Positions 1-58,909 of a stretch of 64,000 nt of DNA are shown here, piece by piece. Both the position numbers and the translations under genes were made by a program. The notes under the pieces were generated by a model. The model ran no database searches and was not told where the DNA came from. It was given only the letters and a program-made list of their open reading frames with translations. Numbering within the stretch: the first letter of the stretch is position 1; every line of letters begins with the position of its first letter. The stretch comes from Podarcis liolepis (lineage: Eukaryota): assembly GCA_965112155.1 (NCBI GenBank), contig OZ218102.1, one strand, 5' to 3'.

Positions 1-1295
1 CAACCGCTCTCTCAATCACCTTACCCAGGAACGGAAGATTCGAAACCGGGCGGTAATTGGATAGATCTAAGGGATCTAATGATGTTTTCTTTAAGAGCGG
101 GAGCACCACTGCCTCCTTCAGTTCCCCTGGAAATATCCCGGTGCCAAGGGACAAATTGATGATATCCCCGGGGGGGGGGGGCGCACCTCGTCTGGACACG
201 CTCTAATCAGCCAAGACGGGCACGGGTCAAGAGGACAGGTGGTGGGCTTTCCAGCTCGGAGGAGTCTGTCCACATCGGCTGGGGATATCCGGTCAAAGTG
301 GTCCAATACTGGACCCGAGGACAGTCGAGGGGCCTCCAGTTCCTTTATTGTATCCAAATTGGCAGGGAGGTCATGTCGGAGCAACAGGACCTTCTCCGCA
401 AAAAAGCTCGCAAATGCCTCACAGCTGTGTGTCAGATTGTTATTTAAATTTGGCTGTCCTTCAAGGGACGTTAAAGACCTAATTATACTAAATATTTGCG
501 CCGGGCAAGAGCTAGCGGATGCAATGGAGGCCGAGAAGTAAGACTTCTTAGCGGCCTTCACTGCCATCTCATAGGTTTTCATAAAAACCCTATAAGATGT
601 TCTTGAGGCTCCATCATGGGCACCCCGCCATACTCTCTCTAGCCGTTTGAGGTCCCGCTTCATTTTCCGAAGCTCCTCGGTAAACCAGGGAGCCCGGTTT
701 CTGCGGGGTCGCAGAGGGTGCTTAGGTGCGATCTCATCGATGGCTGCCAGGAGCTGGATATTCCAGCCCTCAACAAGCTCAGTCAATGAGTCGCCAGAGG
801 GAGCAAGGTCCCACAAGGCTTGACGGAATCTATCAGGGTCCATCAGCCTCTGCGGGCGAGCCCAAATCAGCTCGCCACCTAAGCAGGGTGGGGGTGGAAA
901 GTCAATCCTGGCTTTCAGAGCATAGTGATCAGACCATGGCACCTTCATCGAAGGAGACATGATCACATCTATACTGGCGCCAAAGATCAAATCCAGCGTG
1001 TGGCCTGCTTGATGTGTGGGGCCCGAAACAAACTGGGAGAGCCCTAATGTCACCATGGAAGACACCAGGTTCAGAGCCTGTAAGGAGGGAGTGGCATCAG
1101 CATGGATGTTGAAGTCCCCCAATACCAATAGGTTAGGGAACTCCAAGGCTCAGCCGGCCACCGCCTCCAGCAGGCCTGACAGGGTGGCTGCTGGTGCGCT
1201 AGGTGGCCGGTACACCAGCCAGACAGCCAAGCTCACCTCAGAGCCCCACACTAGGCCAACACATTCAATGCCCGGGATCAATGGCAATGGTAGAG
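1..1295 (-). mobile_element. L2-clade LINE, 5'-truncated ORF2 (APE endonuclease and start of RT), running off the window start
   Basis: ORF 118-1146 has APE motifs LVLGDFNIH, PTHQAGHTLDLIF and SDH, plus the L2-type TTCPLDPCPSWL. After a frameshift at the G run 170-181 it continues [34 protein letters not shown]. The upstream frame reads LVYRPP, followed by an in-frame stop. Confidence 0.9.
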
Positions 1296-23901: not shown

Positions 23902-24390
23902 AAAATTAGCCTTCAATCAAGTAGCAATAATAGCTTTGTCAAATAGCTGCTAAATTTCAAAACAATTTCTGTATAGCTAATAGGATACACTGTCAAAAAA
24001 CTCTTCTTCATATGCTACACAAACATTCTATGCAATAACTCTTGCTTATTTTATTTTGCTAATGTGTTTTATTTGTTATATTATTTGGCTTGGACAAAGA
24101 ATACACATAAAGCATACATATTTGTGTCTACAAAGAGGATATGTGTGAGCAGTACAGATTCTTCCTAAGTAGGAGAAACCACACACTGCACACCTTCTCT
24201 CTCCAGTGGCTGGTTCTGAATGTTACAGTGCAGTTTCTCGAAACAAAATGCAAACTATTTTTTGAAAGAATTTGTCTTTCACACTTGCTTAGTCACTTGG
24301 CTTTAGCTCTCATTCATATGAATGCTGCACAGCAATGTGGCTGACTAATTTGTGTTAATTGGCGATGCATGAAAGAATGAAGACACTTAC

Positions 24391-24542
24391 CCGAATCATC
24401 ATAACTGAACATCTAATGTCATGAATGGTGTCATAGACCTTCTTGGAGATGTCAACAAACTGATTGTCATCAAACAGATGAATTGTATTCCTGCTTATCT
24501 TTTCCAATGCAGTGTTGACTTGACCAATAAACTCTGGAATCA
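24391..24542 (-). CDS. CTNNA3: Internal coding exon (152 bp) of catenin alpha-3 / alpha-T-catenin (vinculin family, M-domain region)
   Basis: Translates (V)IPEFIGQVNTALEKISRNTIHLFDDNQFVDISKKVYDTIHDIRCSVMMIR, matching the alpha-T-catenin motif DDNQFVDISKKIYDTIHDIRCSVMMIR. On the minus strand the acceptor is ...ttgatttaacAG (AG at 24544-24543) after a pyrimidine-rich stretch, and the donor is GTAAGT at 24390-24385. Phase 1 start, phase 0 end. Confidence 0.95.
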
Positions 24543-27524
24543 CTGTTAAATCAAGTTAAAAAGAGAGAGAATTTTTAAGGCAATTGTAGAATGTCTTCTT
24601 AGCCATTATCTTTCAGTTTTGAGAAATCCCATGTATTTGTTTTTTGTTTTTGTTTTTAAAAGCTTTTGGGGACCATAGTGGAAAGGAAAAAGAAAATGGA
24701 AGGTAGACACCTAGGTTAATAATAATGCAACGCATTCAAATTCTATTTGCCGACCAGTAAAGACTTTTAAAGGGGTGGGGATTAAGTCTTGATTCACATG
24801 ATTGCTCCATGCATCATACGCAGTGGAAATCTCCCAGAACTTGCTGTACTTCGGCTCCCTGCTCATGTTTTTTATTAGTCCAGGACATAGCAGAGAAAGG
24901 AAATGGTTAGGCAGAAGGGAGAGAAAGTGAATAAATGGTCGGTAACAATACAACAATCAGTTCCTGCATTTCCCATCTTGTTTATTTTCTTTCACTTACT
25001 CCCCCCCCCCCCCAAGTTGGGTCCACATGGAGAATTGTTTTGTTTGTGTCATATTTCCAAGGACTGGCTTTGTCTGGCAACCTCTCTTTGTCCTGCTCTG
25101 GAGGAAGGGCACAAGAGCTCAGAATACTTTGCCAGGTTTGATGCCTGAGCTCAGTTTCAGGGAGATTGCTCTATCAATTTAGTCCGAGGCACACAAGCAC
25201 TAAGGGGTTGTATAATAAGAACCAGGAACCAAAGTACACATTATTATGAAGGGAAGGGTCAGGAATACATCTACATGTACATTTGATTATCTGATTATGC
25301 ATATAAACTTTCTCTAACCGAGCTCTAACCTGCATTTTGCAACCTGCTTTTGTAGATACCTTATGAATGTACAAACTGCACGCATGCAAGGACCAGATAG
25401 ACAATCAGATGAACATATGAAGATTAAAAAAAGGACAGTGTGCACAATCCTGGCATTATCCTTCACGTGTTCACTTGGTCACTTGAAAAGGGCTAATGTG
25501 CGCTGCCTTTCCCATTGTGTACCTCTCAAAAGCATGAAGGAGGCAAAATTCATCCCGCATCCTACTAAGTAATTTCCATGCTGACTAAAATAAAAGGGTG
25601 TGAACCATAACAAAATTAACTGCATTTTTCTCCAATGATCGATTTTGTATTCAAATAATTTATGACGGCTAAGCAATGCTATAAGTGCAATAGTCCACAT
25701 TGCTAAGACGTTGGCACTGCTACCACTAGCTAAAGTTATAATGACCTTTTTATCCCATAGGGCTTCCCCATAGAAAGTCTCAGAATGGAGTCGTATTTTA
25801 AGACTTATTAAAAATAAAATGTAAAGAAACTTTCTGTGTAAAAGCTCAGCCAAGAGCTCTTTTTTTGAGTTTTATTTCCACGAGTTTTAAGTACCCATGA
25901 GTTAGGAGGTGCTCTGCCAAAAGCATAGAAGGTTTTTAGCATGAATTGTGAGGCAATCTTTGATTTGTAAAAGGTCATATGAGCATCCCTATCCAAAGCT
26001 GGTTCTAACGGAATAGCATTTGACCTTCTGGTGACCTCAATGGAAAACACTTTAATGTTCTCTGTATGTCTTAAGAGGGATCTTACTAAAAGATTAGACA
26101 GGCTATTTAGCTAGCATAAGTTTAACTGTGCTTGCTATTATAATTATAACCATCACTGTGGTTCTTCATTTTATTGTACCTTTTCCTGACGAGCTGGTGT
26201 ATAGGCACTATAGCCCAGTAAAAAAAATTAACTTAAACGTATATATTGATTGAATGATACCACAGATCAGTTACCACCTATCCACTACAAAAACAATCCT
26301 GACATTAATAAGATACAAGGAGAAAAAGAACTATTACTTTCCATCAAAACTCAGTAAAGGAAATTGTCACTGCAAAGAAGCCTTTTTTCAACTCCTAAAT
26401 GATATGCAAGTTCTTATGGTAGTTTTGAACAATTCACAAGCAGAAACAACTATTTGGTTAAGAAATCTGGTGTGTCAACACGAAAAAGTCTGCAGTCCTA
26501 TCCACATCAACTAAATTGCATCATCTCTGCAGGATGTCTGAGAAAACATGTTTGGGTTTGGGCTGCAGGAATATGAACTGGGTCTCAGTTCTTCCTCCCT
26601 TCTTTTCCTGCTTTGTCCCTTTATATCCAAGCCTCATTTACAAAAAAAATTCTGGTGAAAGAATGGGACTTCAGATGTGCTTGTGCAACATGCGAACATT
26701 CCAACATCCCTAAAGCATCATCTCTTTTTTAAAGAGATTCAAGGAACATAAGGAACCTTGATACTAGGAACCTAAGGCCCAAGAGGCATACCATTCAAAA
26801 AATAATACTGTATGCTACCAAGTATACGAAAGAGGAAAAAGATAAATGGATATAGTTCAATATTCCAGATATTAAACAGAATCTTTAACCCAGAATATAT
26901 AAAGTACTTAACTTGACAAGACATTTGCACCCTCAGATCTCAGATCACACCAGTTGGTCCTAATACATTTTAACGCTTGGCACATAAACTGATCATATAT
27001 TAAGCATGCCAAGGAGCCCAAGGCAAATTTCCATTTCAAATACAGGTGAACTGAGTTTCTTATCTTAAGCTTTCACGTTCCGATTTTCAATGCTATCTAT
27101 AATTGAAGGAGTCACATGTTGAGTTTTGATTGTTGGCTTTGATTTGTTACGTATTTTGAAAACCTATGCTTTCTGCATGCAGGCCAGGCAGATCAGACAC
27201 TAGTGTTTCTGTTGCCAGCCACATTGTTTGCAATGGGGAATTCAGATTGATTTAACTGTTCTGATTATGAAAATGGATTCCTATCAGAAGTACTATAAGT
27301 CTGCTAACAGTGATAGACAAAGGGTAAACATTTTGTGCACGCACAAATCTTAGGAGCAGGCAAATTTTTCAATTGAGATGAAAGCACAAGTAACAGGACT
27401 GCTTGGAACTTGCTCTTCTTAGTATATTCTATTTTTTGCCACAGCCTACCCCACTGCCATTCTTTTAGGCAATGATTAGTTAAGAAGTTCCCGGACTCAA
27501 GGAACATGGAAATAACTTTAAAAG

Positions 27525-46748: not shown

Positions 46749-47283
46749 CTGATAATCAGACATCAAGAATCACAAAACAGAGAAACCAGTAGGAGAACAC
46801 TTCAATCTCCCAGGACATTCTATACAAGATCTCAAAGTAGCTGTTTTACTACAAAGGAGTTTCAGAAATAGACTGGAAAGAGAAGCTGCTGAATTGCAAC
46901 TCATTACCAAACTTAAAACCATGGAGAGACCTGGTCTCAACAGAGACATTGGATTCTTATCTCATTATACATGACTAGCTATTTTTCACCTTCTCACCCC
47001 TTGCCTTTTCCTGTAAGACCTATTGCAGTCGTTAAGAGTCGTCAACAGGCTCATCTCAGCTACCTGCCAATCACCCATTCCCACCACCCTTCTGAGTAAT
47101 ACCCCTCCCCACCTTCTCACTATATAGAAGGATCTGGCAACTTCTGTTTCAGTGTATCTGAAGAAGTGTGCATGCACACGAAAGCTCATACCAAGAACTA
47201 ACTTAGTTGGTCTTTAAGGTGCTACTGGAAGGAATTTTTTTATTTTGACTATGGCAGACCAACACGGCTACCTATCTGTAACT
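46749..47283 (+). mobile_element. Penelope-like element (Neptune-type GIY-YIG C-terminus plus pLTR)
   Basis: Translates SDIKNHKTEKPVGEHFNLPGHSIQDLKVAVLLQRSFRNRLEREAAELQLITKLKTMERPGLNRD...* followed by a hammerhead and ttggtctttaaggtgctac. gcttcctt flanks both ends (46741-46748 and 47284-47291). Confidence 0.88.
47154..47191 (+). ncRNA. Minimal type I hammerhead ribozyme (Penelope-associated)
   Basis: GUAU-CUGAAGA-A-GUGUG(CAUG)CACAC-GAAA-GC-UC-AUAC: intact core, stem I GUAU/AUAC, stem II of 5 bp, stem III reduced to a palindromic AGCU. Confidence 0.8.
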
Positions 47284-47338: not shown

Positions 47339-47480
47339 GAATCATAGAATTGTGGAATTGGAAGGGACCATGAGGATCCTCTACTCCAACCTCCTGCAAT
47401 ACAGAAATATTTTGCCCAATGTGGGGCTCAAACCCACACCCCTGAGATTAAGAGTCTCATGCTCTACCAACTGAGCTATC
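47339..47480 (-). mobile_element. tRNA-Lys/CR1-tail SINE
   Basis: Reverse complement gatagctcagttggtagagcatgagactcttaatctcaggg...ccccacattgggc followed by a CR1 tail. Confidence 0.85.
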
Positions 47481-48987
47481 AAACTTCAGCTCCCTAGTAT
47501 AGCATGTGGGTGAAAAGGATTCAGGGCATTTTCTTGCTCATTGATTATTTTGGCTTTGTATTTGTAAAAATTAAAATTAAAATACTCTCATTTGATATGC
47601 TGGCAATATTTCTTCCTAGTAATTTCTCCAAAGGCTCACGATAACCCTGGCCTCACTAAATCACAGCTGGCAAGATTACTACAAGAACAATTTACAGAAG
47701 GTAGAATTATATAACATTCTTGAAAGCAATTGCCTTATAACAATTTATTTGCTAGGAAAGAGGAAACAAAGGACTCACAAAGTGAATACTTTCCAACAAC
47801 TAATAAGTATTAAATATATACATACACTTACTTTAATCAAGGAGTTAAGCACCTAATTAAGCAGAAAATGCAATTGCATTTTTAAATAGACTATCCCAAA
47901 CTTCAGGCTCACACATTGTCCTCTCACTGCTCTTACCTTCTAAAAGCCATTATAATTTTTTTAAACACACAAACTATGAACTCTGATTCAGAGAAAGCAA
48001 TTCCTTATGAATTATGCATCAGGGATACATATGGAAGTTTCCATGGTCAGGTGGTAGGAGAAGGCTGTTAAAGAAAGATAAAACAAGAAAAAAAAATGTA
48101 TTCTGGGCCACTTCTCTTTCAGAAAGGGATAGAAAGACGGACAGTTTCTGGATCAGTATGGTTTGATTGTGGAATTTATGTGAATAAGGAAACTAACGAT
48201 GTAATGCTGCCATCTCAATATGCTACCCTGTGGAACTCATAATTCTTTATGCTCTAGTAACAGTAAGGAAGCTCATTATATTTATACTGTTCTTTGTAGA
48301 GGCTAAATCCTGTGTGATTCTTGCAGTGCCTATTAGTCTCTGGACCTGAATTTTATTTATGTTTTAAGTTATGTTCTTTGCATAGCAAGATGAATAACCC
48401 AGATCTTAGTGGAAGCTAAACTATAGCAGAATGGAAACAGCACTGATTGCAGTGAATACAGGATGGGATGGAAATCGCTGCCTCTCAGCCACATCCTCAT
48501 TCATTACACATGGAAGATGAACATTCATAGGTGATGGTGCCAATCAGGTGATGAGTGTGGGGAGGTCTACAGGAAGGAAACTGACGTGTGACACATACAC
48601 CCCAACTGCTGCTGCCTAAGTCACTATGGTAGGAGTAAAAAGCCAGGGAGGTCTCTGTCCTCCAGGGCTGGTTGTACCATTAGGAAGAGTGAAGTGACCT
48701 CCACAGGGAGCTGATTTTTCATATCATAAAAGGGAAACAAATTATTAGTTGTTTGATTGTTACTGCAGGTTACAAAATATTTTAACAGATGCATCTTAGT
48801 TAGATGAAAACATCAACCCGGAGCAGCACAATGACTTCGGCCAGCCCTAGAATTCTTAAATTCTAGTTAGAGCAATCAAAATGATTCAAAGCAGTGATTG
48901 ATAATACCTTGCACATACTCAAGGCATAACGTTCTAAAGGAGGCTATTACTGTCAGCAGAAATGCCTATACAATTGTGGTGAAAGCC

Positions 48988-51303: not shown

Positions 51304-53915
51304 GAGAAGGTTGATTATAATTGCAGCTAGGGGTAGAATTCAGTTTGCATTTAAAGGCAAAGTTCCCTACTACACACTTTCCAAAATGGTACAAGAACAG
51401 AAACACAAGCATCCTTCAAAATTCACACTTCTACACATTTTTGAAATGCAGTTCCCCAGCCAAGTAATGAGTACAAAAAATGCACATTTGGAGAAATATG
51501 AACTAAAATGTTCATTAATTTTCATGAGAATTTATTACTTATTAATTTACATACCACTTAAAACCCTTTCTTTACACACCTGTGTACCCCCCCCCCACAT
51601 AATTTGTGGACATCCAAAGAAACTGAATGTTGGAAGATTCAGGACAGATAAAACAAAGTACTTCTTTATGCAGTGCATAAACGACGGAACTTGCTCCGAT
51701 AGGAGAGTGTGATGCTCACCTTGGATGGCTTTAAAAGAGGAATAGAAAAATGGACGGAGGAGAGGGCTACTGGCCCTGATGACTACACTCTGCTTCCACA
51801 GTTGAGGCAGCAATGCTTCTGAATACTAGTTGCTGGAAGCCACAGTTGCAGAGAGTGCTCTTGTGCTTCAATCCTGCTTGATGGTTTCCCATAGGTTGGC
51901 CACTGTGAGAACAGGATGCTAGACTAAATAGCCCACTGGAATGAACCAGCAGGCTCTTCTTATGGTTAACTAAATTTATGTGGGATACATAATCAATTTT
52001 GAATATAAAGCATCTCTTCTGGAGTGCAAAATGTCAAGTAAGCTCACCCATCGGTCCACCTTTGCAAACAACCAAGAGGCTTCACCTTCACTGTCTGGTG
52101 CCTTGTATTCTTTGACTGCTTAAAAGTTACTTAGAGAACAGTTGAGGGCATATGCATTTAATCCACTTAAAAGGTCTGCAATTGAAATTAGTGGGGATGG
52201 GGAAAATGAACATTTCCCATCCTTTCTGCTACATGGTCCGGATGTAAATAAAGTTATATAATCCTCCCCGAGTCCCAGGAACAGGAACACATCCAATTAG
52301 ATAAAATACATTAAAAAGAAGTACAACCATCAGTTCTGGCACAGACTAGGTCTCTGCACAACAGAGGTAAAAGACTGTATAGATTAGGGAGTGAATCTTT
52401 GCCCACTGATTCTACAATCATTTAAAACTAATGGACTCAGCATGACCTTTGCTGTAGAATATAATATGCAATAAAATTATGGGGCCTGTGTTGGCGTCTG
52501 GAAATAGAAATTTGATAGATAGGCACTATTGTGAAAATATGAGAAGGAAGAACTATGATACATAATTATAATATGACTGGGTCCCCAAATATAATTATAG
52601 CAGGAAACCCATCTCACGCACCCCAAATATATACATGTATGTAGGTGTGCTTTGAAAATGTAGCTTACAATTTAGGATAGAGGATGAAATAGGGACTAAG
52701 TATTATGAAGCTTCAGCTATAAATACTCCCTTCCATCTTAAAGGGAAAATGTTCGGCTTATAAAGGAAAAGTGGCATACCAAGGTCTGGATGAATAACAC
52801 AGGGAAACATTTGGTCAAATTTTTCTCTAGAAAATAATACCTCTTTAATGATGTAATACGACATCATAATGCTCTTTAGTACCTCTTTAATGATGTAATG
52901 CGGAGTCATAATGCTATTTGCTAGTAATATATGGGAAGGTGAAACTTCTCTTTTCTTGTACCCATTTCTGCCATGTTTCTGTGTGACCTTTCAGAGTTGC
53001 AAGCTCTAAAGGATCCAGAGTAGTAGATGTGATACAAGGATGGCCTGCTACTCTGAAGTGTGAATATAAATTCCTGGTGTACTGAAGATCCCAGGTACTT
53101 GCTGTATTTGAATTCAAATTTGGAGCTCTATGCAAATATGACTGAATGGACAATGAAATGTTTTTACATTCTTATAGCAGCTAGTGCAGCAGGTAGAAGG
53201 GTGTGTGTGAAAGGGTTAATCAAATGAACACTTTGGAGTATTCACTCACTTAATCATTCCAAAAGCAGATTATCTCTTCACTTGCTCTAACCTGGTCATC
53301 TCCTAACACTGTATTTGTATTGTTGTGTTTGTTGGTGCCAGACTCACTTAAACTTCCGAGTCCAGTAAGTGTTATAATTTAATTAAGGCTTGGGGTGTTG
53401 AAACTGGGTGCTAGACCCATGTGTATTAAGTTGTGTGCTAGACACATCTAATCCCCTGGAATATACAAGTGTTAAAAGCTAGGCTAAGATTCCTGGGTTA
53501 AGGTAATAGCTTGGGGAATGGGCCATTAAGACAATCAAAGGAACTCAGTGTGAGATGCCAAAAGAGTGGGGCCCCTTTCCCTCAGCAGATAGAGCCAGAA
53601 CTTAGAGTAATATGACCTAGAAGTAAAGCAGGAAGTAGGAGGGACAGAGCAACATTTTGAGAGTACATTTGATGTCTGTTTGGATCCAAGACTGCAGCTA
53701 TGGGAGAAGCAATACCCTCTTTGGGTGACTGTGCTTTGAACTTCTCAATCGTAGGCTCAGGTTGCAGATATGTATAAATAAACCATATATCACAAAGACA
53801 CTACAGTCTCCCCTATGCATCATTCCCAAAAGAAAGCACAGAAGCACATCTGGAACCCTTGGAATCTCACATACTCAGAGATTGTAGTGGCATTCAACAG
53901 TATAATTGAATATAT

Positions 53916-54431
53916 TATTTATAATGAGTTAAAAAAAATGTTTAGATATACTTTCCCCCCAAAAATGGAAGCATTCCTGTTGGGGATGACAGGAGCAGAA
54001 ATATTAAAAGTTGACCAGAAATTGTTTATGTATGCCACTATGGCAGCTAGAATTTTATTAGCCCCAAAGTGGAAGCAACAAGAATTACCAATGGTAGGCA
54101 AATGGCAGAAAAGATGATGGACTATGTGGAATTGGCTTCTTTGCCAATTCGGGGAGAATCCGAAACCAGAGTGACCAAGTTTCCCAGGGAGAATGGAATA
54201 AATTTGTTCAATACATAGACAATCATTGTAAACATATAAAGGCACTAGCTGGACTGCGATAAAGCTTGCAATGTTTAAAAGAAGAAACTTTCTACTTGTG
54301 CTTTAAGTTTTAAATAACTTAAAATAAATGTATAATTTAGATGGTCCAAATGAAATGGAGGGAAGTCAAAAGCTCGGCAGAGCTAAAATTTGTAAAAGGT
54401 GATATGATTTTATAATATTGTTAAAAATGGA
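53916..54431 (+). mobile_element. L1 3' fragment whose tail region is a (TA)n tract hosting the Penelope palindrome
   Basis: Encodes IYNELKKMFRYTFPPKMEAFLLG...LFMYATMAARILLAPKWK, homologous to 34611-35324. 20-bp TSD aacagtataatYgaatatat at 53896-53915 and 56937-56956. Confidence 0.85.
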
Positions 54432-54453
54432 ATATATATATATATATATATAT
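54432..54453. repeat. (TA)n flanking the left arm
   Basis: Directly visible. Confidence 0.95.
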
Positions 54454-55650
54454 ATGCAGGTTTTGGTGTCCTCGGGTGTCTTCCCGTGTAAAAGTTGGGG
54501 TGTCTAGGCGACGTTTCGACGAGGTCTCACTCGTCATCTTCAGGCTGGTGCTTTCGGCTTCTTGTTACTGGAACAGAGCGGGATCTCAGTGTTTGAGTTC
54601 CTATAAATACTGTAGAGGGGTGTGGTGTATTGCCTCAAAAGTTCTGGGCAGAGGGGAAGTTCCCAGGCTAGTGTTCTTTTCTTCTTTTGTTCCTTAATTA
54701 CTTGAGGGATATCTTGAGTGATTTCTTGAGTGATATTCTGAGTACCACTTAGGTGGGTCATTAGGTGTGGATTAGTTGCTAAAGCCTTCGTGTCTTGACC
54801 TCTTGAATTTGTGAAGAGTTTTTCTGGGAAGATGGCTGTACTGCACTTAGTTGTGCTTTGGCTTGGCTTCGTGTATAGGGGCGAGCTGTGGTTTTGTGCC
54901 CTGTGCCAGCCAGATCTGTGTAGGGATTGCAGGGGGGTGCAGCATCCGGAGTTGCCACTATGGTTTGGTTACTGGATGGTGTCTGTAATTTATCTGTGGA
55001 GAGGGTCTGGGTTTGGGTCTGGTGTGGTTGATTGGTGGTGGCGTTCTGTGTGCCTCTGGATCTGGTGTCGGTTTTTGTGGGGAGGGCTAATTTCCAGATG
55101 TCTGGCAGGCGGGACGTGTCGTCACGCTTGTTCATGTTGTGAGGGTGTTTCTCTATCTCGATGGCTTCCATGATTATTCTCTTGTGGTGATGTTCCATGT
55201 TAAAGAGCAATTTGGAATCTGCAAAATTAATTTCGTGTCCTGTTTCTTTCATGTGTTGGAAAAGAGAGGAAGATTTTTCTTCTTTTTTGACGGCATTCTT
55301 GTGTTCTGCGATACGTGCATTTATTCGTCTGTTTGTTTGTCCAATGTACGTGGCTGGGCAGACTTTGCAGGGTATTTCATAGACCCCTTGGTTTTCCAAC
55401 TGGATTTTATCTTTGGGGTTTCTGAGGATATTGGCTATTTTTTGGTTGGTGCAAAAGGCTGTTTTGATATTGTGTTTATGGAGGATTTTGCTAATTTTAT
55501 CTGTAGTGCCCTTGATATAAGGAAGGAGGGCCATGCCATTGTTTTCTTCCGTGTCTTGGTTTTTGGGGGGTGTTTCTTTTTGGATTAGCTTCTTAACCCT
55601 GTTTTGCTGGTATCCATTGGCGATTAACACATTTGAGAGATTCTGTAACT
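54454..55650 (-). mobile_element. Penelope-like element, left (inverted) arm: GIY-YIG endonuclease region plus pLTR
   Basis: ORF 54779-55696 contains LPYIKGTTDKI, GVYEIPC..CPATYIGQTNR.I..RIAEH and EAIEI...NMNKRD. Confidence 0.93.
54508..54545 (-). ncRNA. Mirror copy of the hammerhead core, sense to CTNNA3 pre-mRNA
   Basis: Exact reverse complement of 56755-56792. Confidence 0.7.
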
Positions 55651-55679
55651 CAATGGATACCAATGGATACCAATGGATA

Positions 55680-56876
55680 CCAATGGATACCAGCAAAACA
55701 GGGTTAAGAAGCTAATCCAAAAAGAAACACCCCCCAAAAACCAAGACACGGAAGAAAACAATGGCATGGCCCTCCTTCCTTATATCAAGGGCACTACAGA
55801 TAAAATTAGCAAAATCCTCCATAAACACAATATCAAAACAGCCTTTTGCACCAACCAAAAAATAGCCAATATCCTCAGAAACCCCAAAGATAAAATCCAG
55901 TTGGAAAACCAAGGGGTCTATGAAATACCCTGCAAAGTCTGCCCAGCCACGTACATTGGACAAACAAACAGACGAATAAATGCACGTATCGCAGAACACA
56001 AGAATGCCGTCAAAAAAGAAGAAAAATCTTCCTCTCTTTTCCAACACATGAAAGAAACAGGACACGAAATTAATTTTGCAGATTCCAAATTGCTCTTTAA
56101 CATGGAACATCACCACAAGAGAATAATCATGGAAGCCATCGAGATAGAGAAACACCCTCACAACATGAACAAGCGTGACGACACGTCCCGCCTGCCAGAC
56201 ATCTGGAAATTAGCCCTCCCCACAAAAACCGACACCAGATCCAGAGGCACACAGAACGCCACCACCAATCAACCACACCAGACCCAAACCCAGACCCTCT
56301 CCACAGATAAATTACAGACACCATCCAGTAACCAAACCATAGTGGCAACTCCGGATGCTGCACCCCCCTGCAATCCCTACACAGATCTGGCTGGCACAGG
56401 GCACAAAACCACAGCTCGCCCCTATACACGAAGCCAAGCCAAAGCACAACTAAGTGCAGTACAGCCATCTTCCCAGAAAAACTCTTCACAAATTCAAGAG
56501 GTCAAGACACGAAGGCTTTAGCAACTAATCCACACCTAATGACCCACCTAAGTGGTACTCAGAATATCACTCAAGAAATCACTCAAGATATCCCTCAAGT
56601 AATTAAGGAACAAAAGAAGAAAAGAACACTAGCCTGGGAACTTCCCCTCTGCCCAGAACTTTTGAGGCAATACACCACACCCCTCTACAGTATTTATAGG
56701 AACTCAAACACTGAGATCCCGCTCTGTTCCAGTAACAAGAAGCCGAAAGCACCAGCCTGAAGATGACGAGTGAGACCTCGTCGAAACGTCGCCTAGACAC
56801 CCCAACTTTTACACGGGAAGACACCCGAGGACACCAAAACCTGCATTCCTATACCCGTGAAAATCTACGAAAACAA
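55680..56876 (+). mobile_element. Penelope-like element, right arm with complete 3' end
   Basis: ORF 55673-56521 is identical in translation to the left arm from NGYQQ onward. The arm extends about 30 nt further (tcctatacccgtgaaaatctacgaaaacaa) before (TA)n. Confidence 0.93.
56755..56792 (+). ncRNA. Hammerhead ribozyme core in the Penelope pLTR
   Basis: CUGAAGA(56757-63)-U-GACGAG(UGAGAC)CUCGUC-GAAA-CG-UC. Stem II has 6 bp, stem III is a palindromic ACGU, and stem I shows only about 2 bp. Confidence 0.7.
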
Positions 56877-56934
56877 ATATATATATATATATATATAGAT
56901 ATATATATAGATATATATATATATATATATATAT
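56877..56934. repeat. (TA)n flanking the right arm
   Basis: Directly visible, with two GA interruptions. Confidence 0.95.
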
Positions 56935-57084
56935 AAAACAGTATAATCGAATATATAATGCCTTACCTGGTCAGGGAAACAAAGTATCCTAGGCCATCTC
57001 TTGACCATAACCAGTTTATGTTATGTTTTATGCCATGTTTTAAATCAGTGCCTGGGTGCAGTAGCGCGCTGGACGAGGGCCAGC

Positions 57085-57735
57085 AATCATCAACTTAGGT
57101 TGCCAACTATGCCCTTTCCTGGACAGGGATAGCTTAGCTACAGTGATTCATGCATTGGTAGCTTCACAATTGGACTACTGTAATGTACTCTATGTGAGGT
57201 TTTACTTAGGATTGATCTGGAAACTGCAGTTGGTGCAGAATGTTGCAGTCAGGTTGTTGAGTGGAGCACCTGGATGCACACCTATTATACCTACATGGAG
57301 AGAATTGCATTAGCTGCTGATCAGCTACCAGGCTATGCCAAAGGTCATTTTGTTAATATATTATGCCCGGAACAACTTGGGATCAAGGTTGCCTGAAGGA
57401 CCACCTGTCCTTGGTAAGGTCACATATATCACTTGGAGAAATTCTATTAATGGCATTGCATCCTATAGAGTATCACAGGGCAGTGACCTGAAAACGGTCA
57501 TTTTCTGCTGTTGATCCTGTACTGCCATATGTGAAACAGCAACAATCAGTTGCCTCAGATATCTTGTGAAGACATATCATTTTCTCCTCCCAGGCTTTCC
57601 CTGACCCGTAAGGTTGGACCTGGCTTTATGTCACTAAATCCTCAGAATTTTTGTTTTATTCACTTTTATATACTTTTCTATATTTTTATATTGCTGTTTA
57701 CTGGTTTTTACGTTGTGTTTTCATTTTAATGATAT
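57085..57735 (+). mobile_element. Old L2 LINE 3' region
   Basis: Encodes LATVIHALVASQLDYCNVLY...KLQLVQNVAVRLL (L2 RT C-terminus), followed by a T-rich 3' UTR interrupted by CR1. Confidence 0.75.
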
Positions 57736-58207
57736 AGTGAGAACCCAAAGAGTGCTCACTACTGGTTCTTCATCACCCTGCAAAAAAGTAGCAAATGGAG
57801 TTCTGCAGGGTTCTGTCCTGGGCCCACTGTTATTCAATGTATTTATAAATGACTTGGACAAAGGAATTGAGGGGATGTGCATCAACTTTGCAGATGACAC
57901 CAACCTGGGAGGGGTAGGTAATGCTGTGAAAGACAGAATCAGGATTAAGATGGCCTTAACAGATTGGAGAACTGGACCCAAACTAACAAAATGAATTTCA
58001 GTAAGGGCAAATGTAAGGCTCTACACTTAGGCAGGAAGAACCAGATGCACAAATAGAAGTGATTGCCAGTAGTACATGTGAAAAGGATCTAGGGGTCATG
58101 GTAGGCCACAAGCTTAACATGAGTCAACAGTGGGATGTAGGATCAAAAAGAACTTATGTTACTCTAGGCTGCATCAGCAGAAGTATAGTGTCCTGATCAA
58201 GGGAATA

Positions 58208-58566
58208 AAAAGGTAAAGGTACCCCTGCCCGTACGGGCCAGTCTTGACAGACTCTAGGGTTGTGCGCTCATCTCACTCTAGAGGCCGGGAGCCAGTGCTA
58301 TCCGCAGACACTTCCGGGTCACGTGGCCAGTATGACGAAGCTACTCTGGCGAGCCAGAGCCGCACACGGAAACACCGTTTACCTTCCCGCTAGTAAGCGG
58401 TCCCTATTTATCTACTTGCACCCGGGGGTGCTTTCGAACTGCTAGGTTGGCAGGCACTGGGACCGAGCAATGGGAGCGCACCCCGCCGCAGGGATTCAAA
58501 CCGCCGACCATGCGACCGGCAAGTCCTAGGCGCTGAGGTTTTTACCCACTGAGCCACCCGCGTCCC
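58208..58566 (-). mobile_element. Sauria SINE nested in CR1
   Basis: Homologous to 2935-3301. 13-bp TSD gatcaagggaata at 58195-58207 and 58567-58579. Confidence 0.93.
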
Positions 58567-58784: not shown

Positions 58785-58909
58785 TAGAATTGTAGAATTG
58801 GAAGGAACCACATGGGTCATGTAGTTTAACCCCCTGCAATGCTTAAGGTGGGGCTCAAATCCACAACCCTAAGATTAAAAGTCTCATGTTCTACTGACTG
58901 AGCTAGCCC
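58785..58909 (-). mobile_element. tRNA-Lys/CR1-tail SINE nested in CR1
   Basis: Reverse complement gggctagctcagtcagtagaacatgagacttttaatcttaggg... followed by a CR1 tail. Confidence 0.8.

What the first reader, a model, noticed from the sequence alone, without database searches (positions are those of the whole stretch)
54454..56876. 2.4-kb near-perfect Penelope palindrome carrying two hammerhead cores inside a CTNNA3 intron
Seen: arms 54454-55620 and 55680-56846 (1167 bp each) are mirror images about 55650, every overlapping ORF translates identically, and only 59 bp separate them. Each arm is a 5'-truncated Penelope 3' end (GIY-YIG ORF, low-complexity tail, pLTR, hammerhead core). Known: Penelope-like elements often insert with an inverted partial copy and encode minimal hammerheads. 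Inference: the arm identity implies a very recent, possibly polymorphic insertion. CTNNA3 transcription would make a ~1.17-kb perfect dsRNA hairpin, a substrate for ADAR or Dicer and a possible source of endo-siRNA against this whole Penelope family. The DNA could extrude a cruciform or act as a breakage hotspot in a gene whose human orthologue is a known common fragile site.
Basis: partly seen in the sequence, partly recalled or inferred. Interest (0 to 1): 0.85.

Follow-up and report, generated by a model that had tools for sequence, protein, structure and literature searches.

The report
Head-to-head Penelope retrotransposon insertion
Two mirror-image, front-truncated copies of a very abundant Penelope-type jumping gene sit head to head in an (AT)n repeat inside an intron of a lizard alpha-catenin gene; the layout is real but already described for these elements, so the locus is ordinary.

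Summary
Arms 54454-55620 and 55680-56846 are perfect reverse complements (0 mismatches in 1167 bp) with a 59-bp spacer.

Each arm is the 3' part of a Penelope/Poseidon-type element: an intact GIY-YIG endonuclease C-terminus, a pseudo-LTR, a minimal hammerhead motif and the first codons of the next ORF.

The palindrome has two asymmetries.
- The left copy runs 32 nt further 5', so half the spacer is element sequence. The rest of the spacer is three extra copies of a 10-nt unit, joined at 2-nt "CA" microhomologies.
- Only the right copy carries the 30-nt "tail".

The two outer ends lie about 84 and 114 nt into the next ORF. The second falls inside the 111-118 nt RT start site measured for the anole element PAc. 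Both flanks are (AT)n.

I read this as one integration event primed on both cut target strands. That rules out simple snap-back and makes an assembly fold-back unlikely.

An alpha-catenin exon at 24391-24542 (- strand) supports the intron claim; that the gene is CTNNA3 is inferred.

The family has roughly thousands of near-identical copies. No dsRNA, siRNA, RNA-editing or DNA-fragility evidence was found.

This scan has already noted at least eight similar Penelope palindromes elsewhere in the same genome.

The parts
54432..54453 (.). (AT)n on the left flank: one half of the target microsatellite
   Evidence: Sequence. AT-rich and microsatellite targets are the known preference of these elements (PMC8557442, PMC11167929).
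54454..55652 (-). Left Penelope-like copy, 5'-truncated, without tail (1199 nt). Its outer end lies about 84 nt into the next ORF.
   Evidence: Perfect mirror of the right arm up to 55620. Family contigs and RNA reads continue past 55652 with other sequence (loose end '55652 behind'). Homologues align from residue E16, which is encoded at 55649-55651.
54782..55652 (-). C-terminal part of the element ORF (linker plus GIY-YIG endonuclease plus low-complexity tail), left copy. The stop codon is at 54779-54781.
54510..54543 (-). Minimal hammerhead motif of the left copy. It is in the sense orientation relative to a - strand host transcript.
   Evidence: Descriptor scan.
55653..55679 (.). Junction scar. 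With the CA at 55651-55652 and the C at 55680, these bases form three extra tandem copies of the 10-nt unit CAATGGATAC; the fourth, canonical copy is 55681-55690.
   Evidence: Sequence. The unit ends and restarts on the dinucleotide CA, and the left copy also ends in CA (loose end).
55680..56876 (+). Right Penelope-like copy, 5'-truncated, with tail (1197 nt). Its outer end lies about 114 nt into the next ORF.
55680..56521 (+). C-terminal part of the element ORF with the GIY-YIG endonuclease, right copy, stop codon included.
   Evidence: Pfam GIY-YIG E=4e-4, below the curated cut-off. There are 10006 homologues; the full-length ones of about 800 aa carry RVT_1, and the query aligns to their last ~200 residues with the GVY...YIG, Cys/His and catalytic R/E columns invariant.
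56522..56762 (+). Non-coding part of the pseudo-LTR, between the stop codon and the next ATG.
   Evidence: ORF map. The layout is as described for PAc (PMC11167929).
56757..56790 (+). Minimal hammerhead motif: CUGAAGA core, one bulged U, a 6-bp helix II, then GAAA-CG-UC. The ORF's ATG (56763) lies at the start of helix II.
   Evidence: chance 0.015 per window. Helix II forms in the MFE fold. The architecture is as in PMC4209133 and PMC11167929.
56847..56876 (+). 30-nt 'tail', present on the right copy only.
   Evidence: Sequence. Family copies that end at 56846 and continue directly into (AT)n are seen in three runs. A one-sided 30-40 nt tail is a hallmark of these elements (PMC8557442, PMC3846280, PMC11167929).
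56877..56936 (.). (AT)n with two AG interruptions on the right flank: the other half of the target microsatellite.
24391..24542 (-). Alpha-catenin exon (152 nt) of the host gene, with an AG acceptor and a GTAAGT donor.
   Evidence: Pfam Vinculin family E=4.1e-5 among 142 stop-free pieces. PDB phmmer matches alpha-catenin 2 at E=3.5e-10 and alpha-catenin 1 at its residues 581-634.

Best explanation
This is a genuine, young insertion of a very high-copy Penelope/Poseidon-type retroelement into an (AT)n microsatellite. It lies in an intron of an alpha-catenin gene (probably CTNNA3, - strand).

I infer it was made in one integration event in which the element's GIY-YIG endonuclease cut both target strands and each 3'-OH primed its own reverse transcription.
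- The + strand of the left flank primed at the inner RT start site, about 84 nt into the next ORF, giving no tail.
- The - strand of the right flank primed at the outer start site, about 114 nt in, giving a tail.

Both cDNAs ran towards the 5' end of the RNA. The left cDNA stopped at 55652. Its 3' CA then annealed to a TG in the other cDNA, slipped three times over a 10-nt unit, and copied the other cDNA out to the right flank. The result is two 5'-truncated copies head to head with their 3' ends outward.

Shown: the anatomy, the family membership, the two different outer ends, the two different inner ends, the microhomologies, and the (AT)n flanks.

Inferred: the order of events and the use of both strands.

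The hammerhead motifs are passengers of the pLTR. In a host read-through transcript the sense motif would be base-paired to its antisense twin, so it is not expected to cleave. No host function is indicated.
For: - Perfect 1167-bp arms.
- The ORF aligns to the C-terminal ~200 residues of ~800-aa RT-bearing proteins, with the GIY-YIG and Cys/His columns conserved.
- The min-HHR has the published PLE traits: a bulged base 5' of a long helix II, and a palindromic ACGU in place of helix III (PMC4209133).
- As in PAc, the ATG lies at the start of helix II and the cut site is about 25 nt after the start codon. The tailed end lies 114 +/- 1 nt into the ORF, inside PAc's 111-118 nt RT start site. The tail equals the stretch between the two start sites (PMC11167929).
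- PAc protein cleaves and extends both target strands in vitro (PMC11167929).
- Each copy has a part the other lacks. The left copy has 32 nt of element coding sequence (loose end at 55652). The right copy has the tail. So neither copy can have been templated wholly from the other.
- The arms agree at sites where the family in the source species is split roughly half and half, for example 54827, 54858, 55273, 55550 and 55593. That points to one source RNA or one event.
- Both flanks are (AT)n, and family copies that end at 56846 and continue into (AT)n occur in three runs.
- Unique flanks are present at single-copy depth in the source species and two sister species.
- Head-to-head inverted copies with a one-sided tail are the described PLE architecture (PMC8557442, PMC3846280).
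Against: - No read or contig was shown to span a flank-arm joint or the centre. Logan contigs break at (AT)n and inside the high-copy arms.
So the structure rests on the assembly plus internal logic.
- Use of both strands is known only in vitro, and for the anole element, not this family.
- The inner RT start site (about 84 nt) could not be checked against PAc's figure.
- That the tail is canonical element sequence rests on the open reading frame, a weak N-terminal alignment and the literature, not on other copies seen here.
Confidence: 0.75

Rival explanations
1. Snap-back (self-priming). A single cDNA primed on one strand folded back on itself at a microhomology and copied itself. This makes the second arm, as proposed in general terms for PLE inverted junctions (PMC3846280).
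For: Perfect arm identity. A short loop-like spacer with CA/TG microhomology 33 nt upstream on the same strand. The literature favours self-priming to explain palindromes at PLE inverted junctions.
Against: In a snap-back the second copy is a subset of the first at both ends. Here the copy that owns the unique inner 32 nt (left) lacks the tail, and the other copy (right) has it. A fold-back copy of the left cDNA cannot contain 30 nt that its template lacks. The two outer ends match the two canonical RT start sites.
Confidence: 0.15
2. Assembly artefact: a fold-back chimeric long read, or a mis-join of two family copies, created a palindrome that does not exist in the animal.
For: No spanning read was seen. 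The family has thousands of near-identical copies, and PLE tandem/inverted structures are known to trouble assemblers (PMC8557442). Perfect arm identity is also what a fold-back read would give.
Against: The palindrome stops exactly at element termini, not in flanking DNA. It has different, biologically meaningful ends on the two sides (tail or no tail) and an asymmetric centre with microhomology and slippage. It is followed on both sides by different unique flanks that exist at single-copy depth in three species, and both flanks border the same kind of (AT)n tract. Earlier notes of this scan list many such palindromes in this genome down to 89 bp; these are leads only.
Confidence: 0.06
3. Two independent insertions of the same family into the same (AT)n tract, in opposite orientations, that happen to abut.
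For: (AT)n tracts are hot spots and the family is very abundant.
Against: There is no target DNA and no (AT)n between the two 5' ends. The arms are identical at all sites where the family is polymorphic. The joint shows a template-switch signature.
Confidence: 0.03
4. One reading: the host pre-mRNA folds the 1.17-kb arms into dsRNA that is edited or diced into endo-siRNAs against the family, and the DNA is a cruciform or breakage hot spot.
For: Perfect complementarity guarantees that a read-through transcript could form the hairpin. The host gene runs through it on the - strand. Human CTNNA3 is listed among common-fragile-site genes (FRA10D; PMC4311028).
Against: There are no RNA reads on the unique flanks and no A>G excess in the one RNA run laid, which is from a sister species. 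Sense and antisense family RNA already exists at about 4:1 from thousands of copies, so this locus would add little. The 59-bp spacer is far beyond the length at which palindrome fragility collapses in yeast (PMC8053094). The arms show no sign of the deletions that unstable palindromes acquire.
Confidence: 0.07

Closest known systems
Penelope/Poseidon-clade EN+ Penelope-like elements, especially PAc (Poseidon of Anolis carolinensis; PMC11167929)
   Same: C-terminal GIY-YIG endonuclease after an RT. A pLTR with a minimal hammerhead whose helix II starts at the ORF's ATG. An RT start about 114 nt into the ORF, an optional 30-nt tail, AT-rich or microsatellite targets, heavy 5' truncation, and sense transcription of the family.
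   Different: This is a different squamate family; the best library hits are 51-85% identical fragments. Only the 3' 1.2 kb is present here, so the RT itself is absent from the locus.
[quoted passage not shown]
   Same: Head-to-head arrangement with 3' ends outward, a tail at one end only, and a junction formed by microhomology.
   Different: The textbook form has a full or longer copy plus a short inverted pLTR. Here both copies are truncated at nearly the same point, which gives a near-symmetrical 2.4-kb palindrome.
Twin priming of LINE-1 (L1 inversion/truncation insertions)
   Same: Both target strands prime reverse transcription, and the cDNAs are joined by microhomology.
   Different: L1 twin priming uses one RNA, so the two segments are non-overlapping parts of the element and no palindrome results. 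Here both cDNAs copy the same 3' region, so the product is an inverted duplication.
Minimal dimeric hammerhead ribozymes of metazoan PLEs (PMC4209133)
   Same: CUGANGA...GAAA core, a bulged base 5' of a long helix II, no hairpin helix III but a palindromic tetranucleotide (ACGU) that could pair between two copies, and a UC cleavage site.
   Different: Helix I next to the core is only 2 bp here. The two copies are on opposite strands, so one transcript carries one sense and one antisense motif, which cannot form the active dimer.
Hairpin-RNA (hpRNA) endo-siRNA loci of flies and mouse oocytes
   Same: A long inverted repeat that could be transcribed as a single hairpin.
   Different: There is no evidence of transcription through the locus or of small RNAs. 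This is a resemblance of form only.

Membership tests
Penelope-like element (EN+ Penelope/Poseidon type) | C-terminal GIY-YIG endonuclease with the PLE-typical Cys/His motif | tested here: met
   Pfam GIY-YIG E=4e-4, 21.1 bits against a cut-off of 22.6. In the alignment with 12 homologues the G104, Y106, C110, C113, Y117, G119, R128, H132, H148, H154, R173 and E177 columns are invariant.
Penelope-like element (EN+ Penelope/Poseidon type) | Reverse transcriptase upstream of the endonuclease in the same ORF | tested here: inconclusive
   The RT is absent from the locus because both copies are 5'-truncated in the RT-EN linker. Seven full-length homologues (767-841 aa) carry RVT_1, and the query matches their C-terminal region.
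Penelope-like element (EN+ Penelope/Poseidon type) | pLTR carrying a hammerhead motif, with the ORF start inside or next to it | tested here: met
   Motif at 56757-56790, ATG at 56763. Same layout as PAc (PMC11167929).
Penelope-like element (EN+ Penelope/Poseidon type) | [quoted passage not shown] | tested here: met
   30 nt (56847-56876) on the right copy only. Tail-less ends at 56846 are common in the family.
Penelope-like element (EN+ Penelope/Poseidon type) | Insertion into AT-rich or microsatellite DNA, 5' truncation, inverted adjacent copy | tested here: met
   (AT)n on both sides and two 5'-truncated inverted copies. Read depth rises towards the 3' end.
Hammerhead ribozyme (minimal, dimer-type of PLEs) | Conserved core C3-U4-G5-A6-N7-G8-A9 ... 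G12-A13-A14 ... U16.1-H17 | tested here: met
   CUGAAGA ... GAAA ... UC are present on each arm. The chance expectation is 0.015 per 64 kb, both strands.
Hammerhead ribozyme (minimal, dimer-type of PLEs) | Helix II hairpin; helix III replaced by a short palindrome that pairs in a dimer | tested here: met
   A 6-bp GACGAG/CUCGUC helix with a 6-nt loop forms in the MFE fold. ACGU is self-complementary.
Hammerhead ribozyme (minimal, dimer-type of PLEs) | Helix I of about 4-6 bp flanking the core and the cleavage site | tested here: inconclusive
   Only 2 adjacent base pairs (GC/GC) by inspection. The fold z-score is -0.73. A 2-bp helix I is reported for D. virilis (PMC4209133).
Hammerhead ribozyme (minimal, dimer-type of PLEs) | Match to a curated hammerhead covariance model | tested here: not met
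   No Rfam hammerhead family at E<=1. The only hits, MIR7996 and MIR827, are driven by the palindrome centre. This is expected, because Rfam models require a hairpin helix III.
Hammerhead ribozyme (minimal, dimer-type of PLEs) | Self-cleavage | not testable with these tools
   PAc's motif cleaves only when the protein is present (PMC11167929). PLE min-HHRs have low activity in vitro (PMC4209133).
CTNNA3 (alpha-T-catenin) intron | Alpha-catenin exons flanking the locus on one strand | tested here: inconclusive
   One exon was found downstream at 24391-24542 (-). No Vinculin-family piece of 45 aa or more was found in 30-64 kb on the - strand. The upstream exon must lie outside the window. The + strand was not scanned.
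CTNNA3 (alpha-T-catenin) intron | Orthology to CTNNA3 rather than CTNNA1 or CTNNA2 | tested here: inconclusive
   About 47% identity to alpha-catenin 2 over 53 residues, counted, and about as distant from alpha-catenin 1. That is too low for those conserved paralogues and fits alpha-T-catenin, but no alpha-T sequence was available. The Atlas search gave nothing.
hpRNA / endo-siRNA source locus | Transcription through the hairpin and 21-23-nt small RNAs from it | not tested
   No small-RNA data. The one RNA run, from a sister species, has zero depth on the unique flanks.

The most novel reading that the evidence does not exclude
The host pre-mRNA (- strand) reads through both arms and folds into a 1.17-kb perfect hairpin. 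Dicer then cuts it into endo-siRNAs that help restrain this very active Penelope family in a lizard, making it a vertebrate counterpart of fly hpRNA loci. My evidence neither shows nor excludes this. It is made less likely because thousands of family copies already give sense and antisense RNA, and because no reads were seen on the flanks.
Probability: 0.06. Interest if true: 0.6.

Novelty: new member of a known kind. Interest (0 to 1): 0.22.

Why it matters
As a locus it matters little. It is one more insertion of a family with roughly thousands of copies, in an architecture described since 2005.

Its modest value is mechanistic. The two copies each carry a private piece: 32 nt at the inner end of one, and the tail at the outer end of the other. 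The two outer ends fit the two RT start sites that define the tail, one of which falls in the range measured in vitro for the anole element.

That makes the locus a clean natural trace of reverse transcription primed on both cut target strands. It argues against simple snap-back as the origin of head-to-head Penelope copies.

A census of such palindromes in this genome could test that model. The scan has already flagged at least eight.

Tried and rejected
- **Rfam.** At E<=1 over 53.5-57.8 kb and at gathering score over the whole window, no hammerhead hit appeared. The MIR7996 and MIR827 hits at 55552-55746 only reflect the palindrome centre.
- **Read evidence.** I could not obtain spanning reads or an empty site. 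Logan contigs stop at the (AT)n tracts, which the tool masks, and inside the arms.
- **Exact look-up of centre-specific ORFs.** None of the four is in the protein collection. This is uninformative.
- **PAc supplements** held as text contain none of this element's motifs.
- **ESM Atlas** on the alpha-catenin exon gave no usable hit.
- **Exon scan limits.** The + strand stop-free pieces were prepared but not scanned against Pfam, and exons shorter than 45 codons would be missed.
- **A-to-I editing.** Differences in the RNA run are spread over all substitution types (A>G 10, C>T 12, G>A 11, T>C 8). They match variants present in DNA contigs of the same species, so they are family or species variants, not editing.
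- **Tail alignment.** Aligning the 38-codon ORF start, which includes the tail, to N-termini of full-length homologues gave only a weak, ambiguous match.
Full report
**1. Observation**

The repeat finder reports one large inverted repeat in 53000-58500, with 59 nt between the arms. Walking outward from the symmetry centre (i + j = 111300), every base from 55620 to 54454 pairs with its partner from 55680 to 56846. That is 1167 bp with zero mismatches.

blastn and tblastn of the arm against the whole window find only these two copies, both at 100%. All ORFs come in identical pairs.

**2. What each arm is**

The 282-aa ORF (55673-56521, +) scores weakly on Pfam GIY-YIG: E=4e-4, just below the cut-off.

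An exhaustive HMMER search with the 305-aa - strand version finds 10006 relatives, 51 of them at E<=1e-30. Ten of the 150 listed are 700 aa or longer, and the query matches their C-terminal ~200 residues. Seven of them carry Pfam RVT_1, and one also reaches GIY-YIG at 4e-10.

In the alignment the GVY...YIG motif, two Cys, several His and the catalytic Arg/Glu columns are invariant. So each arm is the 3' part of an RT plus GIY-YIG retroelement, that is, a Penelope-like element.

Downstream of the stop codon (56519-56521) the right arm contains, in order:
- a 241-nt non-coding stretch;
- an ATG at 56763 that opens a 38-codon frame running to the end of the element.

Around that ATG lies CUGAAGA-U-GACGAG-(6-nt loop)-CUCGUC-GAAA-CG-UC (56757-56790). 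It has:
- the hammerhead core;
- one bulged base 5' of a long helix II;
- a self-complementary ACGU in place of a hairpin helix III.

These are the traits published for minimal, dimer-type hammerheads of metazoan PLEs (PMC4209133). A descriptor scan finds this motif once on each arm. It expects 0.015 hits per window by chance. Helix II forms in the MFE fold, but the fold as a whole is not unusually stable (z = -0.73). Helix I next to the core is only 2 bp. Rfam has no hit, which is expected for motifs that lack helix III.

**3. Match to the biochemically studied anole element**

For PAc (Poseidon of Anolis carolinensis), PMC11167929 reports that:
- the ORF starts at helix II of the hammerhead, with the cut site 26 nt downstream;
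- reverse transcription starts internally at two adjacent sites, the main one 111-118 nt into the ORF in an AC-rich stretch;
- the optional 30-40 nt genomic "tail" is the sequence between those sites;
- the protein prefers AT-rich DNA;
- it cleaves and extends both target strands.

Here:
- the cut site is about 25 nt after the start codon;
- the right copy ends 114 +/- 1 nt into the ORF (...CGAAAACAA, then (AT)n);
- the left copy ends 82-84 nt in;
- the difference between the two ends is a 30-nt tail (56847-56876);
- both flanks are (AT)n.

Contigs and reads of the family that end at 56846 and run straight into (AT)n occur in three runs. So the tail-less end in an (AT)n tract is a family habit.

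**4. The centre**

In runs of two sister species and in RNA reads, family sequences that follow the left arm continue past 55652 with other sequence (loose end "55652 behind", up to 22 reads). Protein homologues align from Glu16 of the - strand ORF, encoded at 55649-55651.

Hence the first 32 nt of the "spacer" (55621-55652) are element coding sequence that belongs to the left copy.

The remaining 27 nt, together with the CA at 55651-55652 and the C at 55680, are three extra tandem copies of CAATGGATAC. The element has this unit once, at 55681-55690. The left copy ends in CA, and the unit ends and restarts on CA. So every joint has a 2-nt microhomology.

**5. How it arose**

The left copy has private inner sequence, and the right copy has the private tail. 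A fold-back copy can only contain what its template contains, so neither copy can have been templated wholly from the other. This argues against simple snap-back, the idea favoured in general terms for PLE inverted junctions in PMC3846280.

Two abutting independent insertions are unlikely for three reasons:
- no target DNA lies between them;
- the joint has a template-switch signature;
- the arms agree at sites where the family in the source species is split about half and half, for example 54827, 54858, 55273, 55550 and 55593.

The simplest account is one event with priming on both cut strands. One strand primed at each of the two start sites, and the two cDNAs were joined by a CA/TG template switch with three slips. 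This order of events is inference.

**6. Is it an assembly artefact?**

I could not get a spanning read. Logan contigs end at the masked (AT)n tracts and inside the high-copy arms.

Against an artefact:
- the palindrome ends exactly at element termini;
- it has two different, canonical outer ends and an asymmetric centre;
- it is flanked by two different unique sequences that are present at single-copy depth in the source species (0-2 differences per contig) and in two sister species (about 2-3% different).

I put the artefact at about 6%.

**7. Family and age**

Summed word depth over the arms is 10^5-10^6, against about 50 on the flanks, in three species, and it rises towards the 3' end. The tool warns that this is not a copy number. 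[quoted passage not shown] is a fair reading.

With flanks 2-3% diverged between species, about 29 differences would be expected between arms of that age. None is seen, which bounds arm divergence below about 0.26%. The insertion is therefore young, unless gene conversion between the arms erases differences. The endonuclease frame is intact in both arms.

**8. Host gene**

I scanned 284 stop-free pieces of 45 aa or more on the - strand against Pfam.
- One piece in 1-30 kb matches the Vinculin family (E=4.1e-5).
- No piece in 30-64 kb matches it.

The piece is 24358-24555. It holds a 152-nt exon (24391-24542) with an AG acceptor and a GTAAGT donor.

The exon matches alpha-catenin 2 at E=3.5e-10 and alpha-catenin 1 at its residues 581-634. 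Identity is only about 47%, by my count from the alpha-catenin 2 alignment. That fits the divergent paralogue alpha-T-catenin (CTNNA3), which from general knowledge is under 60% identical to alpha-E-catenin. Orthology was not shown directly.

The gene is on the - strand, so the palindrome lies about 30 kb upstream of this exon in the preceding intron. The hammerhead of the left arm is the one in sense to the pre-mRNA.

**9.

A read-through transcript could certainly form a 1.17-kb duplex. That would bury the sense hammerhead, which in any case needs a second sense copy and, for PAc, the protein.

Evidence is lacking, however.
- The one RNA run laid (a sister species, about 12% of the run read) has zero reads on the unique flanks.
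- Reads on the arms flip strand between the arms, so they are family transcripts, about 4:1 sense to antisense.
- Their differences from the window are spread over all substitution types and coincide with DNA variants of that species.

With thousands of copies already giving both strands, this locus would add little dsRNA.

Human CTNNA3 is indeed listed among common-fragile-site genes (FRA10D; PMC4311028). But in yeast, breakage at inverted repeats falls by about 80% once the spacer reaches 9 bp (PMC8053094). The spacer here is 59 bp.

**10. Comparison and verdict**

Head-to-head inverted 5'-truncated copies, a one-sided tail, microsatellite targets and hammerheads in pLTRs are all described features of PLEs (PMC8557442; PMC3846280).

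This scan has already noted at least eight other Penelope palindromes in this wall-lizard genome, and a follow-up of one (s1-843438) called it ordinary.

Its only added value is that its two asymmetries fit priming on both strands better than snap-back.

Noticed in passing
window 47158-47187 (+): A third minimal-hammerhead-like motif with a different sequence: CTGAAGA, one bulged A, a 5-bp GTGTG/CACAC helix, then GAAA-GC-TC, so a palindromic AGCT. It probably belongs to another, older Penelope-like or retrozyme-like family. The chance expectation for such a motif is 0.015 per window.
   Followed up: partly
window 47413-47484 (-) and 58840-58907 (-): Two tRNA-like matches reach the Rfam gathering score (47.4 and 30.2 bits). 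In an intron full of repeats these are most likely tRNA-derived SINE heads rather than tRNA genes.
   Followed up: no
window 24391-24542 (-): A clean 152-nt alpha-catenin exon with an AG acceptor and a GTAAGT donor. It corresponds to residues ~581-634 of alpha-catenin 1 and is about 47% identical to alpha-catenin 2. It is the only coding exon of the host gene found in the window.
   Followed up: yes
window 53702-53852: A short repeat just left of the insertion. Its read depth is about 50-100 times that of its neighbours in three species, and a few RNA reads run on into unrelated sequence. It is another dispersed repeat, not part of the palindrome.
   Followed up: no
window 121-1149 (-): A 343-aa open frame whose sequence looks like the endonuclease and linker part of a LINE. 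One - strand piece in 1-30 kb gave a weak Exo_endo_phos hit (E=0.006), but I did not establish which piece.
   Followed up: no
window 55552-55746: Rfam microRNA-precursor models (MIR7996 at E=1e-11, MIR827) match the palindrome centre, below their gathering scores. This shows how any long perfect hairpin can mimic a plant miRNA precursor model.
   Followed up: yes
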